A program made the translations under genes and the position numbers. The notes under the pieces were generated by a model. It had not been told where the DNA came from and ran no database searches. It saw only the letters and a list, made by a program, of their open reading frames with translations. A stretch of 61,759 nt of DNA, filler included, from Choristocarpus tenellus KU-1152 (lineage: Eukaryota > Protista > Phaeophyceae): NCBI GenBank assembly GCA_964200185.2. It is 11 parts of 11 records of this genome, joined end to end, with 100 filler letters (N's around TTAATTAATTAA, not from the genome) between each part and the next. Parts side by side here need not be neighbours in the genome. Positions count along the whole stretch, not along the records: positions 8,736 to 18,658 come from CAXNAD020003280.1; 10 more parts are not named here. One strand, 5' to 3'. Of this stretch, positions 8,784 to 15,974 are shown in pieces; position 1 is the first letter of the stretch; every line of letters begins with the position of its first letter.

Positions 8784-10853
8784 GTGAACATGACCATAGG
8801 AGTGGTGGAAGAGGTTAATGTCGACCTCAGTGTGGGGAGCAGAATTGTTTGTGTGTATGTGTGAGGGGGCGATGGTAGCTTTGAGAGCAGTTTCAGCAAT
8901 TTTAGGCAGTTGCAACAAATTACATGGACCGTGCAGGGTGTAGCGACAACCAGAAACTATTTTGAAGTCGATTTTTCCATCTAAAAGCAAGAACGAGCTA
9001 GCTGTGCCAGTACATGTCACACCCATGTTTGCTGCAGCTTGGTAAGAGAAACAGGTTAAGCCAAGATTTTGGACATGAGCAATATTCTGAAGTAGTATCT
9101 TCACTTTCTTATTGTCACAGGAGGGAGACAAGATAGATCTCCATGGCCTTCGATATGAAGGGAGTTCTGACTAGCAGTGATTGTCCTTCAATCAAGTACA
9201 CAAGGCTTGTAGTTGGTCAAGAATGTTCTCACGTTAGTCATATGACACAGGGCCGCATTATCACAAGTCCAATCCTCTCTTTGTGCACCATTATCCCTAA
9301 CACTTGACACCAGACACTCATTTACCCCTCACTTGCCTTGAGCATTGCTGCTTGTGGAGTGAGTCCTCAGCAGTGTCCAGTGGTTCATAACGCTTGTTGT
9401 CGCTGCAGCGGATCACACTTGGACATTTCACAGTGGTGTGGGAAGATTCAGTGTTAGTCTCATCCAGCCCAGTAGCTTCCCTTTCTTCCCCAGCTACCGC
9501 CATGGTCATAGATACTGAAGCAAATGTTGTAGCATCATGAGCACGTCTGGAGACAATGGGCTAAAAGAAGCCATCGTGCATACCCCAGTGTCATAATCAG
9601 ATCCCAGCACACTCATAAACTGAAGAAGTATTATTTTGTCACAGATGACGAGGTCCTTTGGCATAATCCAGCTCCATAAGAACTCTGGTTCCATTAGGGT
9701 GAGGAATGGATTGCCCCCCTTCTCCACCTTTGAAGAGAAGAATTGCTGGAATAAATCTTGGCTGTTGCCCACTGTGTTTGGCATAAACCAGTTATCCACA
9801 GCTGCAAAAAGCTCGCTAGGGTTCAGGTGCATGCAGCACAGACCCTTTGTGGCAGGGGTAACAAGAGCAATGGTGATCGCATAATTTTCTTCCTCAGCCA
9901 TCCAAATCTCCTTTCACTAAACCAATCAACCAGTAGTTCCTCATGCAATCACTCCTGATTGATGGATCTTGGGGCAGTTAATGCAGGTAAATAGCCAGTG
10001 CACTTATAGTGGATCATGAAACTCTTTCTCCAATCACAGTAGTTGGAGTTGTCCAACAATTTTGGATGATTGGGCCTTTGATCACTGCCCTCTACCGTAG
10101 GGAGCAAGAACAATTCCAGACCCTGAAATTGCCAAAGAACCTGATCTCCGGCTCACATTGCTCTAACACTAAATCCGTCCAGACTTTCACCATCTTGGAA
10201 ACCTTCACCCACAATGGGTTCAATAGGTCCGACTTCAGCTGGTACAAAGCCAGCTGGCGGCCGTGTGCTGGGCACAGCGGTGTAGACGGTAGGAAGATAC
10301 CCACCACCAACTCTATCAACATCCATCCGAAAATGATGGTCCCAATCTTGGTTCAGTTCAAGTGTTGCCTTTGATTGGTCCTCCACAGTAGAGGAGAGTT
10401 GTTGATATCGATCTGAAGCAAGGGCGGCCTCACTTCGGCCCCTAACATGGACTGGTGTCTCTTCTCCTAGGGAAGACATGATAGGCATGGGTCGAAGCCT
10501 AGGTTTTAATAGTTTGTATTGTAGTACCCCCCGGCTCATGTATGGATAGAAGAGACAAATAAATACCGGAATGTTACCAAATGTTGTCGGGTATTTAATC
10601 CCAAGCAGAGGGGGGGCGGGGCGACCATACAACCTCAAATCATTATGCTTAATGGAGTCAATCCCTATCCATCCATTCGTACACAAGAATAAGTATGGGT
10701 TTACCATATAATAACTCCTGTATTCTGATTCTACATGTATACTACTACTGATATACAATATAGTTGAAGAGTCTACTCGAACATCCGCAACCCTGCCTAG
10801 CCAGGCAAAAGGGTTGGACACACGGTTCCACAAACCCTAGTTGAGTGTGGACA
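8784..10853 (-). mobile_element. Decayed Ty1/copia retrotransposon 5' half (putative 5' LTR ~10710-10853, gag, protease, GAG-pre-integrase)
   Basis: UBN2-like gag (NWFMPNTVGNSQDLFQQFFSSKVEKGGNP...LQFMSVLGSDYD), protease (DWTCDNAALCHMT...HIEGHGDL...LQNIAHVQNL) and pre-integrase (DINLFHHSYGHVH) lie in copia order. Stops and frameshifts are present. Confidence 0.8.
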
Positions 10854-10854
10854 T

Positions 10855-11082
10855 GCATTGCTGAGCTTGAATATATTCCTACTATAATTATATAGTTAAG
10901 AACAATAGCAATATCGGTGTGAGGAATTTTCCAAGAATACTAAACATCCATTTTTCATTCAAACAAATCGCGTAACAAGCAATACAGAATATGACACTAA
11001 ATGATAGTAAAGATATGTCGTGATAAAGAAATTCTAAACCATCATGCCCTACTGTTATACAACGAGGAATAACACCAAATGC
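10855..11082 (-). pseudogene. brnQ: Fragment of bacterial branched-chain amino acid transporter BrnQ (LIVCS family)
   Basis: AFGVIPRCITVGH...FSVIFCIACYAICLNEKWMFSILGKFLTPILLLFLT, then after a 1-nt frameshift IIIVGIYSS. This matches the BrnQ PFxxIPRxxxV and GKxLTPxLL motifs. No introns; AT-rich. Confidence 0.7.
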
Positions 11083-11264
11083 ACTCAACTTGCCCAAACT
11101 ACTATGCGCTCTGAAATTGGTAAACTCAAGCTTGATAAAACCTTTGAAGAAAGAGAATCCCTCAACCACTCCATAGTAACTACTATGAATCAAGCGGCTA
11201 CTAACTGGGGTATACAATGTATGCGTTATGAGATTAAAGATATACAACCTCCTGGATCAATATT
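11083..11264 (+). pseudogene. Fragment of SPFH/stomatin-like (paraslipin/SLP-2) gene, Rickettsiales/alphaproteobacterial type
   Basis: TQLAQTTMRSEIGKLKLDKTFEERESLNHSIVTTMNQAATNWGIQCMRYEIKDIQPPGSIL is a clear SLP-2 SPFH core. AT-rich codon use; no splice sites at its boundaries. Confidence 0.85.
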
Positions 11265-11449
11265 ATGTACCTAGCTCTAGGGAAGAGGAGGGCGTGTGTG
11301 TGCGCGCGCGCGCGTATGAAGTGTTAGCCGTGAGGATGAGCAATTTCCTAGAACAAAAAGGTTTGTGGTATACAACAAACAAATGTTTGCATGGGGTATA
11401 TAGGTACTCATCTCACAGTGCCTTGCTGTGTATGTAGTGACTCTGTATG

Positions 11450-13200
11450 TGTTAGGTTGCTAGGTAGAGAGGGAAAATTTACCTGTGGGGGGTTCTGTAA
11501 TAGCAAAAATGTTGTGGTCCTACCAGTATCGCTATGGTGGGATCTTGTCCTCATCATCTGAGGACTCACCATTGCTGTCAGAGGAGCGTATAGAATGTGG
11601 AGGCAAAGATGGGGTTCACTCTGATCCTGCTGCTGGAGGCATTTCTGGAAGGACGTGGAGATGGTCATCAGAGCAGTAAAGACGGTGTCGACCTTGCAGA
11701 TTGTCGAGAATGGTTATTGTTGGCATCTGCCTCACTGCTGTAGTGTTCACTTCTTGGCCCAGATTTGAGGCCATCACTTGGTTGTATGTTAAATTATCCC
11801 CCAGCTCATACATGGATAGGAGTGATGAACAGAAGGATATTGCCAAATGTTGTAGTGGAGTGAACCATGGCATCCCCTCCCCTGCTTAGCCATGTGAAGC
11901 TCCACTCCCCCAGTCTCACCAGCCTTGTGCAAGCAGCCCTTGCCGACCACCTGCCTCGCCAGGATGCCTTCCCTAGGAGAGTCATCAAGGTCTGCCTTCA
12001 CAGCAAGCACTTTGGAAGCAGCAAGACCTCCCCCTCCAGGGGTTGCCCGCTTGACTCCTTCTCCATTAGGAGTTGGAGGCTTGACTCTAGCTGTTTCATG
12101 AGCGAGTGGGGGGTCTTGTCTTGGAGGTGTGTCATTGCAGCAAGCACCTCAGGTGTAGCTGCTCCTTTCTCCTCTGATGGAGGCTTTGCTACTTCTCCTT
12201 CTGATATCCTGTTCCCTTTTGTGGCAGGTATGGTGACTGCTTTTCTTGCTCTGTAAACAAAAACCTTGTCATCTCTAATCAGTGGGCATGCCCATACCCT
12301 CTCAGGGACAAGTGTGGCAACTTCTCCAGGTCTATCTGGCACAGGCTTGTTAACAGCTGCAACTCTGACCGCATTGCATCGATTGTCTCCATCATCTTGT
12401 GCAGGGATGAGCTCGTTATAAGTAATGGCTGTTGTCCTTGGAGCACTTTTTAGTGTCACGGCTACCGCCCCATTTTTTCTCCTCTCTCACGTTTCATCTC
12501 ACCAATCCACAAGGCGCCGCTTATGACCGTGGTGTTCTCAATAGTGCTGTCCGAGATGGAAAGAATCATTTTCATGGGAAGAATGATTTGCTGCCTCATT
12601 TCAGAACCCTTCATCCCATAGGGACAATCTGGGCCCGACTTGGGCTGGTACACACCCAGTTGAGGGCCGTGTGTTGGGTACAGCAGCCAGGACAGCAGGA
12701 TGATCCCTGCCGCCAACTCCAATACCGGCATCCACCTGAAAACGACAGTCCCAGTCTTGCATTGATTCCATTATCACCTTAAATAGACTCTCTACAGTAC
12801 AGTTGTTTGAAACGATCTTCAGCAAAGGGGACATCACTTCGAACTCAACCATGGACTGGTGCCCCTTCTCCTTCCGAGATATGTTTAGTATGGGTAGAAA
12901 CCTAAGGTTCCAATATATTGTGTTAAAGTATCCCCTGACTCATGTGTGGATAGGGGTGATAATTAGAGGCATAGTGCCGGAAGTTGTCAAGGAGTGATTA
13001 ATCATAAGGAGGTAGGCGGCTAGGAACATCAAGGCACATTGTAATAGTATAATCAATTCCTATCGATTCATTCATTCATATGAAACAATAGTTCTGGGAT
13101 TACCAACTAATAGCTATTGTATTCTGACTCTAGTTGGATATTACTACTGGTGTTCTTCGATGCAGTTGGAGGAGTATATTCGATCATTGTGCCCACTACA
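11450..13200 (-). mobile_element. Second decayed LTR-retrotransposon-like element; its 5' region is homologous to 10200-10790
   Basis: 12600-13190 aligns by eye with 10200-10790 (e.g. CATGGACTGGTG, TGTATTCTGA.TCTA, QDWD...AVP.TRP..G.VPA.VGP). PBS-like TGGTAATCCCAG on the minus strand near 13100. Confidence 0.5.
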
Positions 13201-15974
13201 GAAAAGATCATACCAATGGTCTCAGACAAATTATCGAGGAGGGATTTGTATTCCATTTATTGGCTGGGTTGCTCATAATTTTATGTCCAGTGCCAAGTTG
13301 CATTGCTCTACCCTTTAATGCAGCGTATTCTGGAGGAGGAATGCCTTGAGTACACAGTTGTAGGGTAGCTTTGTTAAAAACTCCAGTGGCGTGATCAGCA
13401 AGCCACTCTGATGTGAAGAATTCACCATACTTGTACCAATCAGTCAACAGTAATGTCAAACACACACACTCACACAACAAATTTCCACATGGCAGATTAG
13501 GCATTCCCCCCCTCTCACGCACTCTATAGAAGCAACAGATGTCTACCCTCAATCCAGCAGGCTTCTGTCGCCCACTACTCCTTCTCACACTTACTTTCTG
13601 CTGCTCAGCCTTAGCCTCGATCTGAGTCTTGTCAGACTCTTCTTTGTTTTATCTCACCCTTCACCTTCCTTGCCCTACCCTTCACAAGTGGAAGGTCATA
13701 TCCAGCAAATTGGTTGACTTCATGCTCATGATCTAGGTACTCGCCCCCACCATCCTAAGAGTACCTGCCCGTGTTCATGGCTCATATTCTCGTTGAACTA
13801 TGTAGTAGTGAGCTTGCTTGTGTGGTCTACATACTCCAAAATAGAAAATACTTTTAACCTAATAGAAATAATCAACCTCTTGGATTACGATTTCCATCAA
13901 TCCCGGTTTGTTCCAATTGGAAGCAATTGGAATTGCTACGTTTCACAACACTTAATAGAAGCGATGATTGCAAACCTGTCTCACAAGACAATCCTTTCAT
14001 TTCTGAAGGATTTCCGCCCACATGAGAATGTCACAGGTGGTTGGTGTAGGCCTGGTTGGACTCGACGGGAAGCATGGACCGGTCAAGTTTAGATTTTGTT
14101 GCTGTAGCAGTAATTACAAGAACAGCTATAGACGCAAATTGTACCGCATCCCGTCTGTTCTTGAAGTTAAGCTGGGTCGGGCTGGGGTAGTATTGCGATG
14201 GGGATCCATGTGGGAAGCCCAAACACGGCTCCTTTTTGTGCTTTGTCTCATGGACTACACACCAGCCCGCTGCAAAACAACAACAAAAAAAATCAGAGAA
14301 GAGGAGGGAAGGGGTATCATGGCGAGTATAAAATCCGATTAGAAGGTAAATCAAAGCCACAAACTCATAGTCCCTCTGTTCTGTGAAGCAAAGGTGCAAG
14401 GTGAGAGGCATTCAATATGCCCATCTCCAGGGTATATGGACGGGTATGCCAAGGGTCATGTCTGCCATGTCCACTTCAAAAAAATTCGGATATATCTGGA
14501 ATCCCACACATAGTGAACGCAGATATATTTGATGGTTGGCGGATTCAGAATTGTTTTCATCCGAAGTTATACATACTTATTTTTTCGTGTTGGGGTCGTA
14601 TAGTACTAGTATATAATACCTAATATATTTTAGTTATAACGTCCAACACCTTCCCGTTGGAAAGTTTGGGGCACCTTGGTAAGCATTCAGAAATTTTTCT
14701 GGACGAGCTAGCTACACATGTGGTAGGGGGTAGAGGAACAGGAGGCTACAGCAGAAAAGGGCTGGTCAAACCCAGATAGTCTCAGTCACAACGCAAGTAG
14801 CCCTATCTAGACGTGTTATGCGTTTTTAAGCTGGAGACACCAGGGAGATGGGCAAGGATATAAGAGTGGTCAAAAACACTATTTTAGCCATCAAAGTCAT
14901 TGTCATGCAGGAACCATGACTTGACCAGGGCCAAAAGAAATTGAGGCTCCCAAAGGCAGGTACGAGAGTGAGTTGCTTAGATCTATTATTGTGCACAGGG
15001 AATCACCACACAACCTACTGCACGTTGCAAAAAGCTGTTCATCGCCACATCATCTCAGTCCACCTCGATTAGCCCTCAAGAATCACAAATATGCGTAACA
15101 GTCTTTTTTAGTATTGGGGATTTGGCCAGCAGCCACCAAATACTTAGGCAACCAAAATCGGATATCACCACAGTGAATAAAACACTGGATGTCGGAATGG
15201 TATGAGAATGGAAGGGTAATTGTTGAGACTATGGGCTACCCATGATACGCTCGTATACCGACCCTCAGCCCTCTACAAATCCCAATGTCAAATGGGTCGA
15301 AGGATCTCAGAATATCTTAACTATCCTACTGTCATCTTCGCAAACATTTCTGTATTGTCTGTGGTGATATTGCATACCAAAGGTTGAATGCCATCTCGTG
15401 GCTACTGCTCAAAATATGTAGCTTGTATAGTAGTGTAGAAAAAATCAGTTTGTATCCTCTCTCCGAAGCTTGTTTGTTGGATATTTCTTAGTCATAGATT
15501 GACCTAACCCTGACAGGAAAAGCGCTTGTGTTCATGGTCAAGGGTCAAGGGATTAAGACGCCTTTTTTTTGCTATATCCACCATACTGACACCACCAGCA
15601 AACCCCCATCACCCGGTTATGGAAAGAAAATTACCAATCATTGATCAGTCTTCTAGAGTGTATGTATAACCCCTTCTCAGTCAGGTACGGCTGGGCAGTT
15701 TCACTTATCATACTCAATAGTAGTATAGTGGTTGTGGGTTGACTTGTGAAAATCATTTCAAGCCTTTTTTTCTTGTGATTGGAACTTGTGCGAAGTAATT
15801 TGAACGTCAGAGGACAGATATGTCATATCACTATCGCATGAGAGATTAAAGGACATTGGGGATCTGCATTCTTTGTCTCTATTTCACCATCATTCCACTC
15901 ACGTATCTCAATTATGTCCCTCCACTTGGTCCATCCTGCACGGTCTGGTGGATGTATTTTGATGTATTTTGCAG

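What the first reader, a model, noticed from the sequence alone, without database searches (positions are those of the whole stretch)
10855..11264. Endosymbiont-like DNA in an algal nuclear contig: back-to-back brnQ and Rickettsiales-type SPFH fragments among LTR-element debris
Seen: a ~410-bp AT-rich, intronless island made of two unrelated gene pieces fused at 11082/11083 in opposite orientation. One is a minus-strand BrnQ transporter segment (FGVIPRCITV...GKFLTPILL, one frameshift); the other is a plus-strand stomatin-like core (TQLAQTTMRSEIGKL...NWGIQCMRYEIKDIQPP). The island abuts the putative 5' LTR of a copia element on the left and host repeat DNA on the right, in a contig that also carries spliced host exons. 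Knowledge: LIVCS/BrnQ transporters are prokaryotic. From memory, the WGIQCMRYEIKDIQPP string is the form seen in Rickettsia-like paraslipins, and Rickettsiales such as Ca. Megaira infect algae. Inference: this is a nuclear insertion of fragmented symbiont DNA joined by end-joining, a molecular fossil of a past or current intracellular infection.
Basis: partly seen in the sequence, partly recalled or inferred. Interest (0 to 1): 0.8.

Follow-up and report, generated by a model that had tools for sequence, protein, structure and literature searches.

The report
Rickettsiaceae DNA scrap in eukaryotic contig
A 411-base AT-rich island in a repeat-rich, apparently nuclear contig is made of two dead gene fragments from Megaira-group Rickettsiaceae bacteria joined head to head, a small molecular fossil of an intracellular infection of a kind already known from other hosts.

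Summary
Window 10855-11084 (minus strand) is a BrnQ/LIVCS fragment with a 1-nt deletion. Window 11083-11265 (plus strand) is an SPFH/paraslipin fragment. The two overlap by 2 nt.

Both trace to Rickettsiaceae of the Megaira group:
- The SPFH piece is 180/183 nt identical to an intact gene on bacterial contigs from three independent metagenomes. In a tree it groups with Rickettsiaceae SAG/MAGs and Ca. Megaera venefica.
- The BrnQ piece is 212/229 nt (62/64 aa) identical to a metagenomic brnQ. It sits in a well-supported clade that contains Rickettsiaceae MAGs.

Independent per-run contigs from two samples of the same organism cross all three junctions. Their depth equals that of the single-copy flank (about 18x), so this is not an assembly chimera. 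The few changes at otherwise conserved residues, plus the frameshift, fit a young non-functional insert.

One sample also holds a contig at about 2000x depth that encodes an intact, related but different brnQ. This hints at a current dense infection by a sister lineage.

Not verified in this piece: the copia/LTR flank, host exons, and that the host is an alga. This is a new member of a known kind (endosymbiont-to-nucleus DNA transfer), of moderate interest.

The parts
10855..11084 (-). Fragment of a Rickettsiaceae-type brnQ (LIVCS branched-chain amino acid carrier). It corresponds to residues of about 90-165 of a 375-aa protein, with a 1-nt deletion at about 10890/10891.
   Evidence: PF05525 and TIGR00796 hits. 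212/229 nt with 1 gap to L092. 62/64 aa to P0189. Careful tree 99/97 with P0189/P0408. The left end at 10855 comes from the X1 high-depth contig.
11083..11265 (+). Fragment of a Rickettsiaceae paraslipin (SPFH/Band 7) gene. It corresponds to residues of about 109-169 of a 313-aa protein.
   Evidence: PF01145 hit. 180/183 nt to L095, L096 and L097. The X18 and X12 contigs run on as the intact gene on both sides. Tree clade with L001/L002/L005, SH-aLRT 98.
11083..11084 (.). Two bases (AC) shared by the ends of both fragments: microhomology at the head-to-head junction.
   Evidence: brnQ homology runs to 11084. SPFH homology starts at 11083.
11044..11274 (+). Chance 76-aa ORF that reads from antisense brnQ into the SPFH fragment and stops in host DNA. 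I take it to be non-functional.
   Evidence: ORF list. No gene with this product is on record.
10226..10750 (.). Host repeat, copy 1. Its 10354-10785 part is multi-copy. It ends 104 nt to the left of the island.
   Evidence: Self-BLAST gives 67% identity to 12632-13149. X1 contig depth is 160-480 (one bin 59) against 18.6.
12632..13149 (.). Host repeat, copy 2, in direct orientation.
10786..10854 (.). Single-copy left flank directly next to the island.
   Evidence: X1 depth 18.6. The X2 contig 10813-10963 crosses the junction.
11266..11784. Single-copy right flank. It includes a (GT)n(GC)n microsatellite at about 11296-11314, within the stretch 11284-11320 that read laying skipped as repeat.
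   Evidence: Sequence. X1 depth 18.6. One 1509-bp X1 contig covers 10454-11900.

Best explanation
The island is a dead insert of DNA from obligate intracellular bacteria of the family Rickettsiaceae (Megaira group, a marine lineage). It sits in low-copy, repeat-rich eukaryotic DNA.

Two fragments were joined head to head across a 2-nt overlap and captured in the host chromosome: about 230 nt of brnQ and 183 nt of a paraslipin gene. These genes are not neighbours in any related bacterial contig seen here. The most likely route is repair of a double-strand break by end-joining, using DNA leaked from lysed intracellular bacteria.

The insert does nothing now. Each piece is a fifth or less of its gene. 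The brnQ piece carries a frameshift, and residues that are otherwise conserved have changed. It is young, with about 1% of changes that look post-insertional.

Shown: bacterial origin and family, borders, continuity with the flanks at single-copy depth, and signs of decay. Inferred: the end-joining mechanism, a single event, the nuclear location, and an infection of this host as the source.
For: Origin of the SPFH piece:
- The best genome hits are Rickettsiaceae bacterium AH-545-L11 (97% aa by tblastn, 95% in the alignment, 84% nt), MAG SGMAG-38, Ca. Megaera venefica and Ca. Megaera polyxenophila.
- The clade with the first three has SH-aLRT 98, inside a 24-row, mostly Rickettsiaceae clade with support 97.
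- It is 180/183 nt identical to three metagenome contigs that carry the intact gene among bacterial neighbours.
- The same relation shows in a macroalgal metagenome and a seawater metatranscriptome.

Origin of the brnQ piece:
- 62/64 aa to P0189 and 92.6% nt to L092, where rpsD lies next to brnQ.
- The clade is supported at 99/97, then 100/97 once the Rickettsiaceae MAG P0204 is included.

Not neighbours in the bacteria: brnQ lies between rpsD and leuS, whereas SPFH lies between gapR and the RNase T gene.

Physical continuity:
- One X1 contig of 1509 bp at depth 18.6 covers 10454-11900 with 1 difference.
- In a second sample, X2, identical contigs cover 10813-10963 and 11022-11283, the latter with 47 nt more.
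- The neighbouring unique flank has depth 15.7-18.6.

Decay:
- There is a 1-nt deletion.
- The window reads GHDG where 0 of 243 homologues have G or D, the usual motif being AHGG. It has G after IQPP where 0 of 127 SPFH homologues do.
- The remaining differences from relatives are mostly synonymous: 11 synonymous to 2 non-synonymous for brnQ, and 2 to 1 for SPFH. That part of the divergence therefore arose in bacteria, not in the host.

Precedent: a 9-kb rickettsial insert in the Volvox carteri nucleus (PMC4324946).
Against: - The flanks were not shown to be nuclear or algal. They have no recognisable gene, and organism names are coded.
- X1 may be the sample the window was assembled from. X2 is from the same study, so the support is only partly independent.
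- Contigs cannot show raw read pairs across the junctions.
- The closest brnQ relative is more distant in synonymous sites (11 of 64 codons) than the closest SPFH relative (2 of 61). The two pieces could therefore come from different strains or events, or the difference may only reflect database sampling.
- A 2-nt overlap is weak evidence for any particular repair pathway.
- No empty-site allele was seen.
Confidence: 0.8

Rival explanations
1. Assembly chimera: reads of a contaminating or resident Rickettsiaceae bacterium were wrongly joined to host repeats.
For: Sample X1 holds a very abundant related brnQ contig at depth of about 2000. Rickettsiaceae genes also sit on short contigs of a brown-alga assembly.
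Against: Contigs built per run from two samples give the same junctions. Their depth is 18.6, like the flank and not like the abundant contig. X2 shows the insert but no high-depth contig. Each fragment is a truncated piece, the pieces are in opposite orientation, and one has a frameshift. No bacterial contig shows such a junction.
Confidence: 0.05
2. The insert is real, but it lies in the genome of another eukaryote living in the culture or sample (for example a bacterivorous protist), not in the labelled organism.
For: Host identity was not testable. The flanks carry no gene.
Against: Three runs labelled with the same organism hold 66-96% of the stretch's words, and no other run holds more than the SPFH part. 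The depth of about 18 is plausible for the main genome.
Confidence: 0.08
3. There were two separate insertions at different times or from different donor strains, one piece landing beside the other, rather than one compound event.
For: Synonymous distance to the nearest known relative differs: 11/64 codons for brnQ against 2/61 for SPFH.
Against: The pieces abut exactly with a 2-nt overlap and no host DNA between them. The distance gap may only reflect which strains happen to be in the databases. The X18 contig with the LEFFYHD motif shows that closer brnQ relatives exist.
Confidence: 0.12
4. The chimeric ORF 11044-11274 is an expressed new host gene.
For: There is an open 76-codon frame with an ATG.
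Against: It keeps 61 of about 313 SPFH residues, without the membrane anchor or the C-terminal domain. No such product is on record. The only RNA contig that matches belongs to the bacterial gene, since its upstream letters follow the bacterium.
Confidence: 0.03

Closest known systems
[quoted passage not shown] 2015, PMC4324946)
   Same: DNA of Rickettsiaceae endosymbionts of algae was fixed in a host nuclear genome. The insert is related to, but not identical with, bacteria found in some present-day strains. It is read as a trace of past infection.
   Different: The Volvox insert is about 9 kb with four genes in bacterial order. Here there are only 411 bp, made of two non-adjacent gene scraps joined in opposite orientation. 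The donor belongs to a marine branch, and the host here is unverified.
Nuclear Wolbachia transfers in arthropods and nematodes, and NUMT/NUPT organelle inserts (from general knowledge)
   Same: Fragments of a cytoplasmic genome are captured at chromosome breaks. They are often mosaics of non-adjacent pieces with short microhomology, and they decay as pseudogenes.
   Different: The donor is a Megaira-group Rickettsiaceae, not Wolbachia or an organelle. Only one tiny insert was seen.
Megaira-group endosymbionts of algae and protists (Davison et al. 2023, PMC10132079; Ciliophrys preprint 10.64898/2026.03.27.714854)
   Same: This is the bacterial lineage of the donor. [quoted passage not shown]
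   Different: Those are living bacteria with whole genomes. This is a dead fragment inside eukaryotic DNA. The nearest species representative is only 84% nt identical in the SPFH piece, so the donor species has no reference genome in that collection.

Membership tests
Endosymbiont-to-nucleus DNA insert (bacterial pseudogene in eukaryotic DNA) | The sequence is of bacterial origin and nests inside a bacterial clade. | tested here: met
   Trees. 98.4% and 92.6% nt identity to bacterial contigs.
Endosymbiont-to-nucleus DNA insert (bacterial pseudogene in eukaryotic DNA) | The sequence is physically continuous with host DNA across both outer junctions. | tested here: met
   X1 contig 10454-11900. 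X2 contigs 10813-10963 and 11022-11283 plus 47 nt. These are contigs, not raw reads.
Endosymbiont-to-nucleus DNA insert (bacterial pseudogene in eukaryotic DNA) | Depth matches single-copy host DNA, not the bacterium. | tested here: met
   Island at 18.6 against a unique flank at 15.7-18.6. The related bacterial-type contig is at about 2000.
Endosymbiont-to-nucleus DNA insert (bacterial pseudogene in eukaryotic DNA) | The flanks are eukaryotic nuclear DNA of the named host. | tested here: inconclusive
   The flanks are repeat-rich with a microsatellite, a weak 5S-like hit and no long genes. There is no host gene, and organism names are coded.
Endosymbiont-to-nucleus DNA insert (bacterial pseudogene in eukaryotic DNA) | The insert is inherited: present in bacteria-free individuals, or an empty site exists in relatives. 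| not testable with these tools
   Only three runs of one study hold the locus.
LIVCS / BrnQ transporter (PF05525, TIGR00796) | Significant match to the family profile. | tested here: met
   29.1 bits against a cut-off of 22.3. Gap-free alignment to residues of about 92-155.
LIVCS / BrnQ transporter (PF05525, TIGR00796) | Complete, open gene of about 375-440 residues. | tested here: not met
   Only about 76 codons are present. There is a 1-nt deletion and the conserved AHGG motif is changed.
SPFH / paraslipin (PF01145 with PF16200) | Significant match to the Band 7 profile. | tested here: met
   34.3 bits against a cut-off of 23.6.
SPFH / paraslipin (PF01145 with PF16200) | Complete gene with N-terminal anchor and C-terminal Band_7_C domain. 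| tested here: not met
   61 of about 313 residues. Intact relatives run on at both ends.
Copia-type LTR retrotransposon next to the island | A pair of similar LTRs around gag, protease, integrase and reverse-transcriptase domains. | tested here: not met
The only repeat pair is 67% alike and encloses 1.9 kb with no such domain.

The most novel reading that the evidence does not exclude
The host may have been infected by more than one Megaira-group lineage. The nuclear scrap records a strain close to a widespread marine Rickettsiaceae. That strain is identical in the SPFH piece across three metagenome contigs that I fetched, and a macroalgal metagenome and a seawater metatranscriptome show the same relation. 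At least one present-day sample is densely populated by a sister lineage, seen as an intact brnQ at about 100 times the host depth.

If so, this would be a second case of symbiont turnover written into a host genome, after Volvox.
Probability: 0.3. Interest if true: 0.6.

Novelty: new member of a known kind. Interest (0 to 1): 0.45.

Why it matters
Dead bacterial fragments in a host chromosome are durable proof that the host lineage was infected, even where the bacterium has since been lost.

Rickettsiaceae of the Megaira group are common in algae and protists, but their history with their hosts is poorly known. A recent preprint counts only two clear earlier cases of such endosymbionts in ochrophyte algae (10.64898/2026.03.27.714854). 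Another reports no endosymbiotic gene transfer in symbiont-bearing diplonemids (10.64898/2026.01.29.702485).

A verified insert, together with a possible living relative in the same sample, gives a concrete locus for dating infection, testing symbiont replacement, and separating true integration from contamination in algal genome projects. The insert itself has no function, so the value is historical and methodological.

Tried and rejected
1. I scanned the JGI metagenome contigs with the 119-aa minus-strand ORF, hoping to catch both the brnQ relatives and the near-identical SPFH gene by its antisense frame.

2. phmmer of the brnQ piece against the 50%-identity representatives gave at most 56% identity, with Berkiella and Bacteroidota labels. 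Taken alone this would have suggested an unknown or non-rickettsial donor. It is an effect of cluster representatives. The word search seeded with the Rickettsiaceae protein P0131 then found 97% and 91% relatives.

3. I looked up the two junction-spanning ORFs as called genes, to learn which runs carry them. Neither is on record.

4. Pfam on 20 other ORFs or open segments of the piece found no transposon or host domain.

5. tblastx of the whole piece against 1.36 Mb of fetched bacterial loci found no second insert. That is a small sample of a bacterial genome, so it is not evidence of absence.

7. A eukaryotic SLP-2 origin is rejected on identity and gene neighbourhood.

8. An organelle origin for the 34-nt stretch 10855-10888, which has a 2000x contig, is rejected. 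Read on the minus strand with its loose ends, that contig is an open BrnQ frame 28/31 identical to Rickettsiaceae-clade proteins.

Full report
**What is there**

The sequence shows an AT-rich stretch with GC of about 0.35-0.37, set in DNA of GC 0.42-0.52.

- On the minus strand, 10891-11091 matches the branched-chain amino acid carrier family: PF05525 at E=6.5e-7 (profile 94-158 of 429) and TIGR00796 at E=4.5e-10.
- On the plus strand, 11044-11271 matches the SPFH/Band 7 domain: PF01145 at E=3.1e-8 (profile 92-151 of 176).

**Borders**

Homologues set the borders precisely.

- The SPFH homology runs from 11083 to 11265. Metagenome contigs that match this stretch continue on both sides with the rest of an intact gene, reading ..YGVNDPYYAV before and QAMELQVAAE.. 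after.
- The brnQ homology runs from 11084 down to 10855-10857.
- The two pieces therefore share two bases, AC at 11083-11084.
- Relative to the closest brnQ, the window lacks one base at about 10890/10891.

**Where the SPFH piece comes from**

A scan of one genome per bacterial species gave these best matches:

| Match | aa identity |
|---|---|
| Rickettsiaceae bacterium AH-545-L11 | 97% (tblastn; 95% in the alignment) |
| Rickettsiaceae MAG SGMAG-38 | 95% |
| Ca. Megaera venefica | 90% |
| Ca. Megaera polyxenophila | 87% |

Nucleotide identity to these was at most 84%, so the donor species is not among those representatives.

In a tree of 80 full-length homologues, the fragment falls with the first two and Ca. 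Megaera venefica (SH-aLRT 98). That group lies inside a 24-row clade (support 97) holding 17 rows labelled Rickettsiaceae, 6 without a family label and one Ca. Synchoanobacter.

A word search seeded with the AH-545-L11 protein then found proteins 60/61 identical. Their contigs are all 180/183 identical to the window, with the same three differences. They come from a JGI metagenome (10.6 kb), a Logan run and an ENA assembly. They carry the gene among bacterial neighbours: HU, cold-shock protein, GapR, SPFH, RNase T, MscS, RecD2.

The same relation was seen in a macroalgal metagenome and a seawater metatranscriptome. Fifteen further runs, mostly marine metagenomes, hold a share of words that fits this piece alone.

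The three plant SPFH proteins that turned up, one of them with two copies of the domain, are only 64-66% identical.

**Where the brnQ piece comes from**

- A full phmmer search against cluster representatives gave at most 56% identity. The labels were Berkiella, Bacteroidota and Alphaproteobacteria. This proved misleading.
- A profile search showed that this short, roughly 380-aa BrnQ subfamily is typical of intracellular bacteria: Rickettsiaceae MAGs, Ca. Tisiphia, Legionella, Berkiella, Paracaedibacter and Bodocaedibacter.
- A further search seeded with the best of these, a Rickettsiaceae MAG protein, found P0189 at 62/64 aa and P0188 at 58/64.
- The P0189 contig, where rpsD lies next to brnQ, is 212/229 nt identical to the window.
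- In a careful tree the fragment joins P0189/P0408 (99/97). It sits within an 8-row clade (100/97) that contains a Rickettsiaceae MAG and a cluster holding Global Ocean Sampling sequences and a short contig of an Ectocarpus assembly.

Both pieces thus come from one family and, as far as can be seen, one marine branch of it. In these bacteria brnQ lies between rpsD and leuS, and the paraslipin gene between gapR and the RNase T gene. The junction in the window therefore joins DNA that is not adjacent in the donor.

**Is it really in the host DNA?**

Contigs that Logan built separately for each run were laid on 10300-11900.

- In X1, one 1509-bp contig at depth 18.6 covers 10454-11900 with a single difference. 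It therefore crosses all three junctions.
- The neighbouring unique flank has depth 15.7-18.6.
- The repeat at 10354-10785 has depth 160-480 in most bins (one bin 59), so it is multi-copy.
- In X2, another sample of the same coded organism and study, identical contigs cover 10813-10963 and 11022-11283, the latter with 47 nt beyond.

This rules out a simple chimera of contaminant reads. X1 may be the source sample, and contigs are not raw reads, so the proof is good but not final.

**Age and state**

Against their closest relatives, the codon differences are mostly synonymous: 11 to 2 in brnQ and 2 to 1 in SPFH. Most of that divergence therefore arose under selection in bacteria, between the true donor and the strains that happen to be sequenced.

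The non-synonymous changes are of another kind.

- The window reads GHDG where 185 of 243 homologues read AHGG, and none has G or D at those places.
- It has G after IQPP where none of 127 homologues does.

Together with the 1-nt deletion, these are about four or five events in 411 nt that look post-insertional. That fits a young pseudogene.

Each piece is a fifth or less of its gene. The 76-codon ORF at 11044-11274 is a chance product of the junction.

**Mechanism**

Mosaics of non-adjacent fragments in mixed orientation, with a base or two of overlap, are the usual outcome when stray DNA is used to patch a chromosome break by end-joining. This is known for organelle and Wolbachia inserts (general knowledge). 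I infer the same here.

The 2-nt overlap is compatible but weak evidence. No empty site was available to show what happened at the outer junctions.

**An unexpected lead**

In X1, the bin 10840-10893 has a summed depth of about 2000. One contig matches only 10855-10888 and runs on with unlike sequence on both sides.

Read on the minus strand, its loose ends and the matched part give PILLLFLSVL-IIVGIYSSSAM-PTDYSATGRN. This is an open BrnQ frame, 28/31 identical to P0200, P0202 and P0204, which form the clade nearest to the insert's within the 8-row group.

Sample X1 therefore seems to hold a genome about 100 times more abundant than the host DNA. It carries an intact brnQ that is related to the insert but differs from it. 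No such contig was laid in X2.

The simplest reading is a dense present-day Rickettsiaceae population of a sister lineage. A high-copy nuclear amplification is not excluded.

**What I could not confirm**

Within this piece I found no copia domains, no convincing LTR pair and no host exon.

- The only repeat pair is 67% alike and encloses 1.9 kb.
- Pfam gave nothing for the other ORFs and open segments.

That the host is an alga, or a stramenopile, was not testable because organism names are coded.

X1 also shows joints from 10503 to about 11785, with 12-14 other letters between, at depths of 24-31. These are probably other copies of the repeat family that lack the 1.3 kb holding the island. 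The sides are short, and I leave this unexplained.

**Comparison and verdict**

The closest described case is the 9-kb rickettsial insert in the Volvox carteri nucleus. It too is related to, but distinct from, bacteria living in some strains (PMC4324946).

[quoted passage not shown] The preprint on the latter says that such endosymbionts are scarcely documented in ochrophytes (10.64898/2026.03.27.714854).

The present insert is a small new member of this known kind. The interest is moderate, and it would rise if the abundant relative in X1 proves to be a living endosymbiont of a different lineage.

Noticed in passing
window 10855-10888 (run X1): A single contig at about 2000x depth, against about 18x for host DNA, matches only these 34 nt. 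With its loose ends it encodes an intact BrnQ stretch 28/31 identical to Rickettsiaceae-clade proteins P0200, P0202 and P0204. This is probably a dense resident bacterium of a sister lineage in that sample. It was not seen in X2.
   Followed up: partly
window 14118-14234 (+): A 5S rRNA match just above the Rfam gathering score (39.7 against 38 bits, full model length). It could be a 5S gene, a pseudogene or a 5S-derived repeat in the host DNA.
   Followed up: no
window 10503 / 11785-11787 (run X1 joints): Other contigs at depth 24-31 join 10503 to about 11785 with 12-14 unrelated letters between. Other copies of the repeat family therefore seem to lack the 1.3 kb that contains the island. The sides are short (23-32 nt).
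   Followed up: no
proteins P0393 and P0411: An NCBI assembly labelled Ectocarpus sp. 12 AP-2014 carries partial Rickettsiaceae-type paraslipin and BrnQ proteins on contigs of 833 and 678 bp. These are probably bacterial contigs left in a brown-alga assembly. A coral 'stomatin-like protein 2' (Stylophora pistillata, P0320) likewise looks like a fused model of the bacterial HU, CSD, GapR and SPFH genes.
   Followed up: no
X18 contig of 252 bp over window 11050-11084: A low-depth macroalgal-metagenome contig carries a close brnQ relative with the motif HGGLEFFYHD. It appears shifted by 2 nt relative to the window's open frame just left of 11050. This may be an error at depth 2.4 or another decayed copy.
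   Followed up: no
L089-L091 (contigs of Rickettsiaceae MAG protein P0131): In this more distant Rickettsiaceae, brnQ lies beside a RHH/ParE toxin-antitoxin pair and a TrbC gene. This differs from the rpsD-brnQ-leuS setting of the insert's closest relatives.
   Followed up: no
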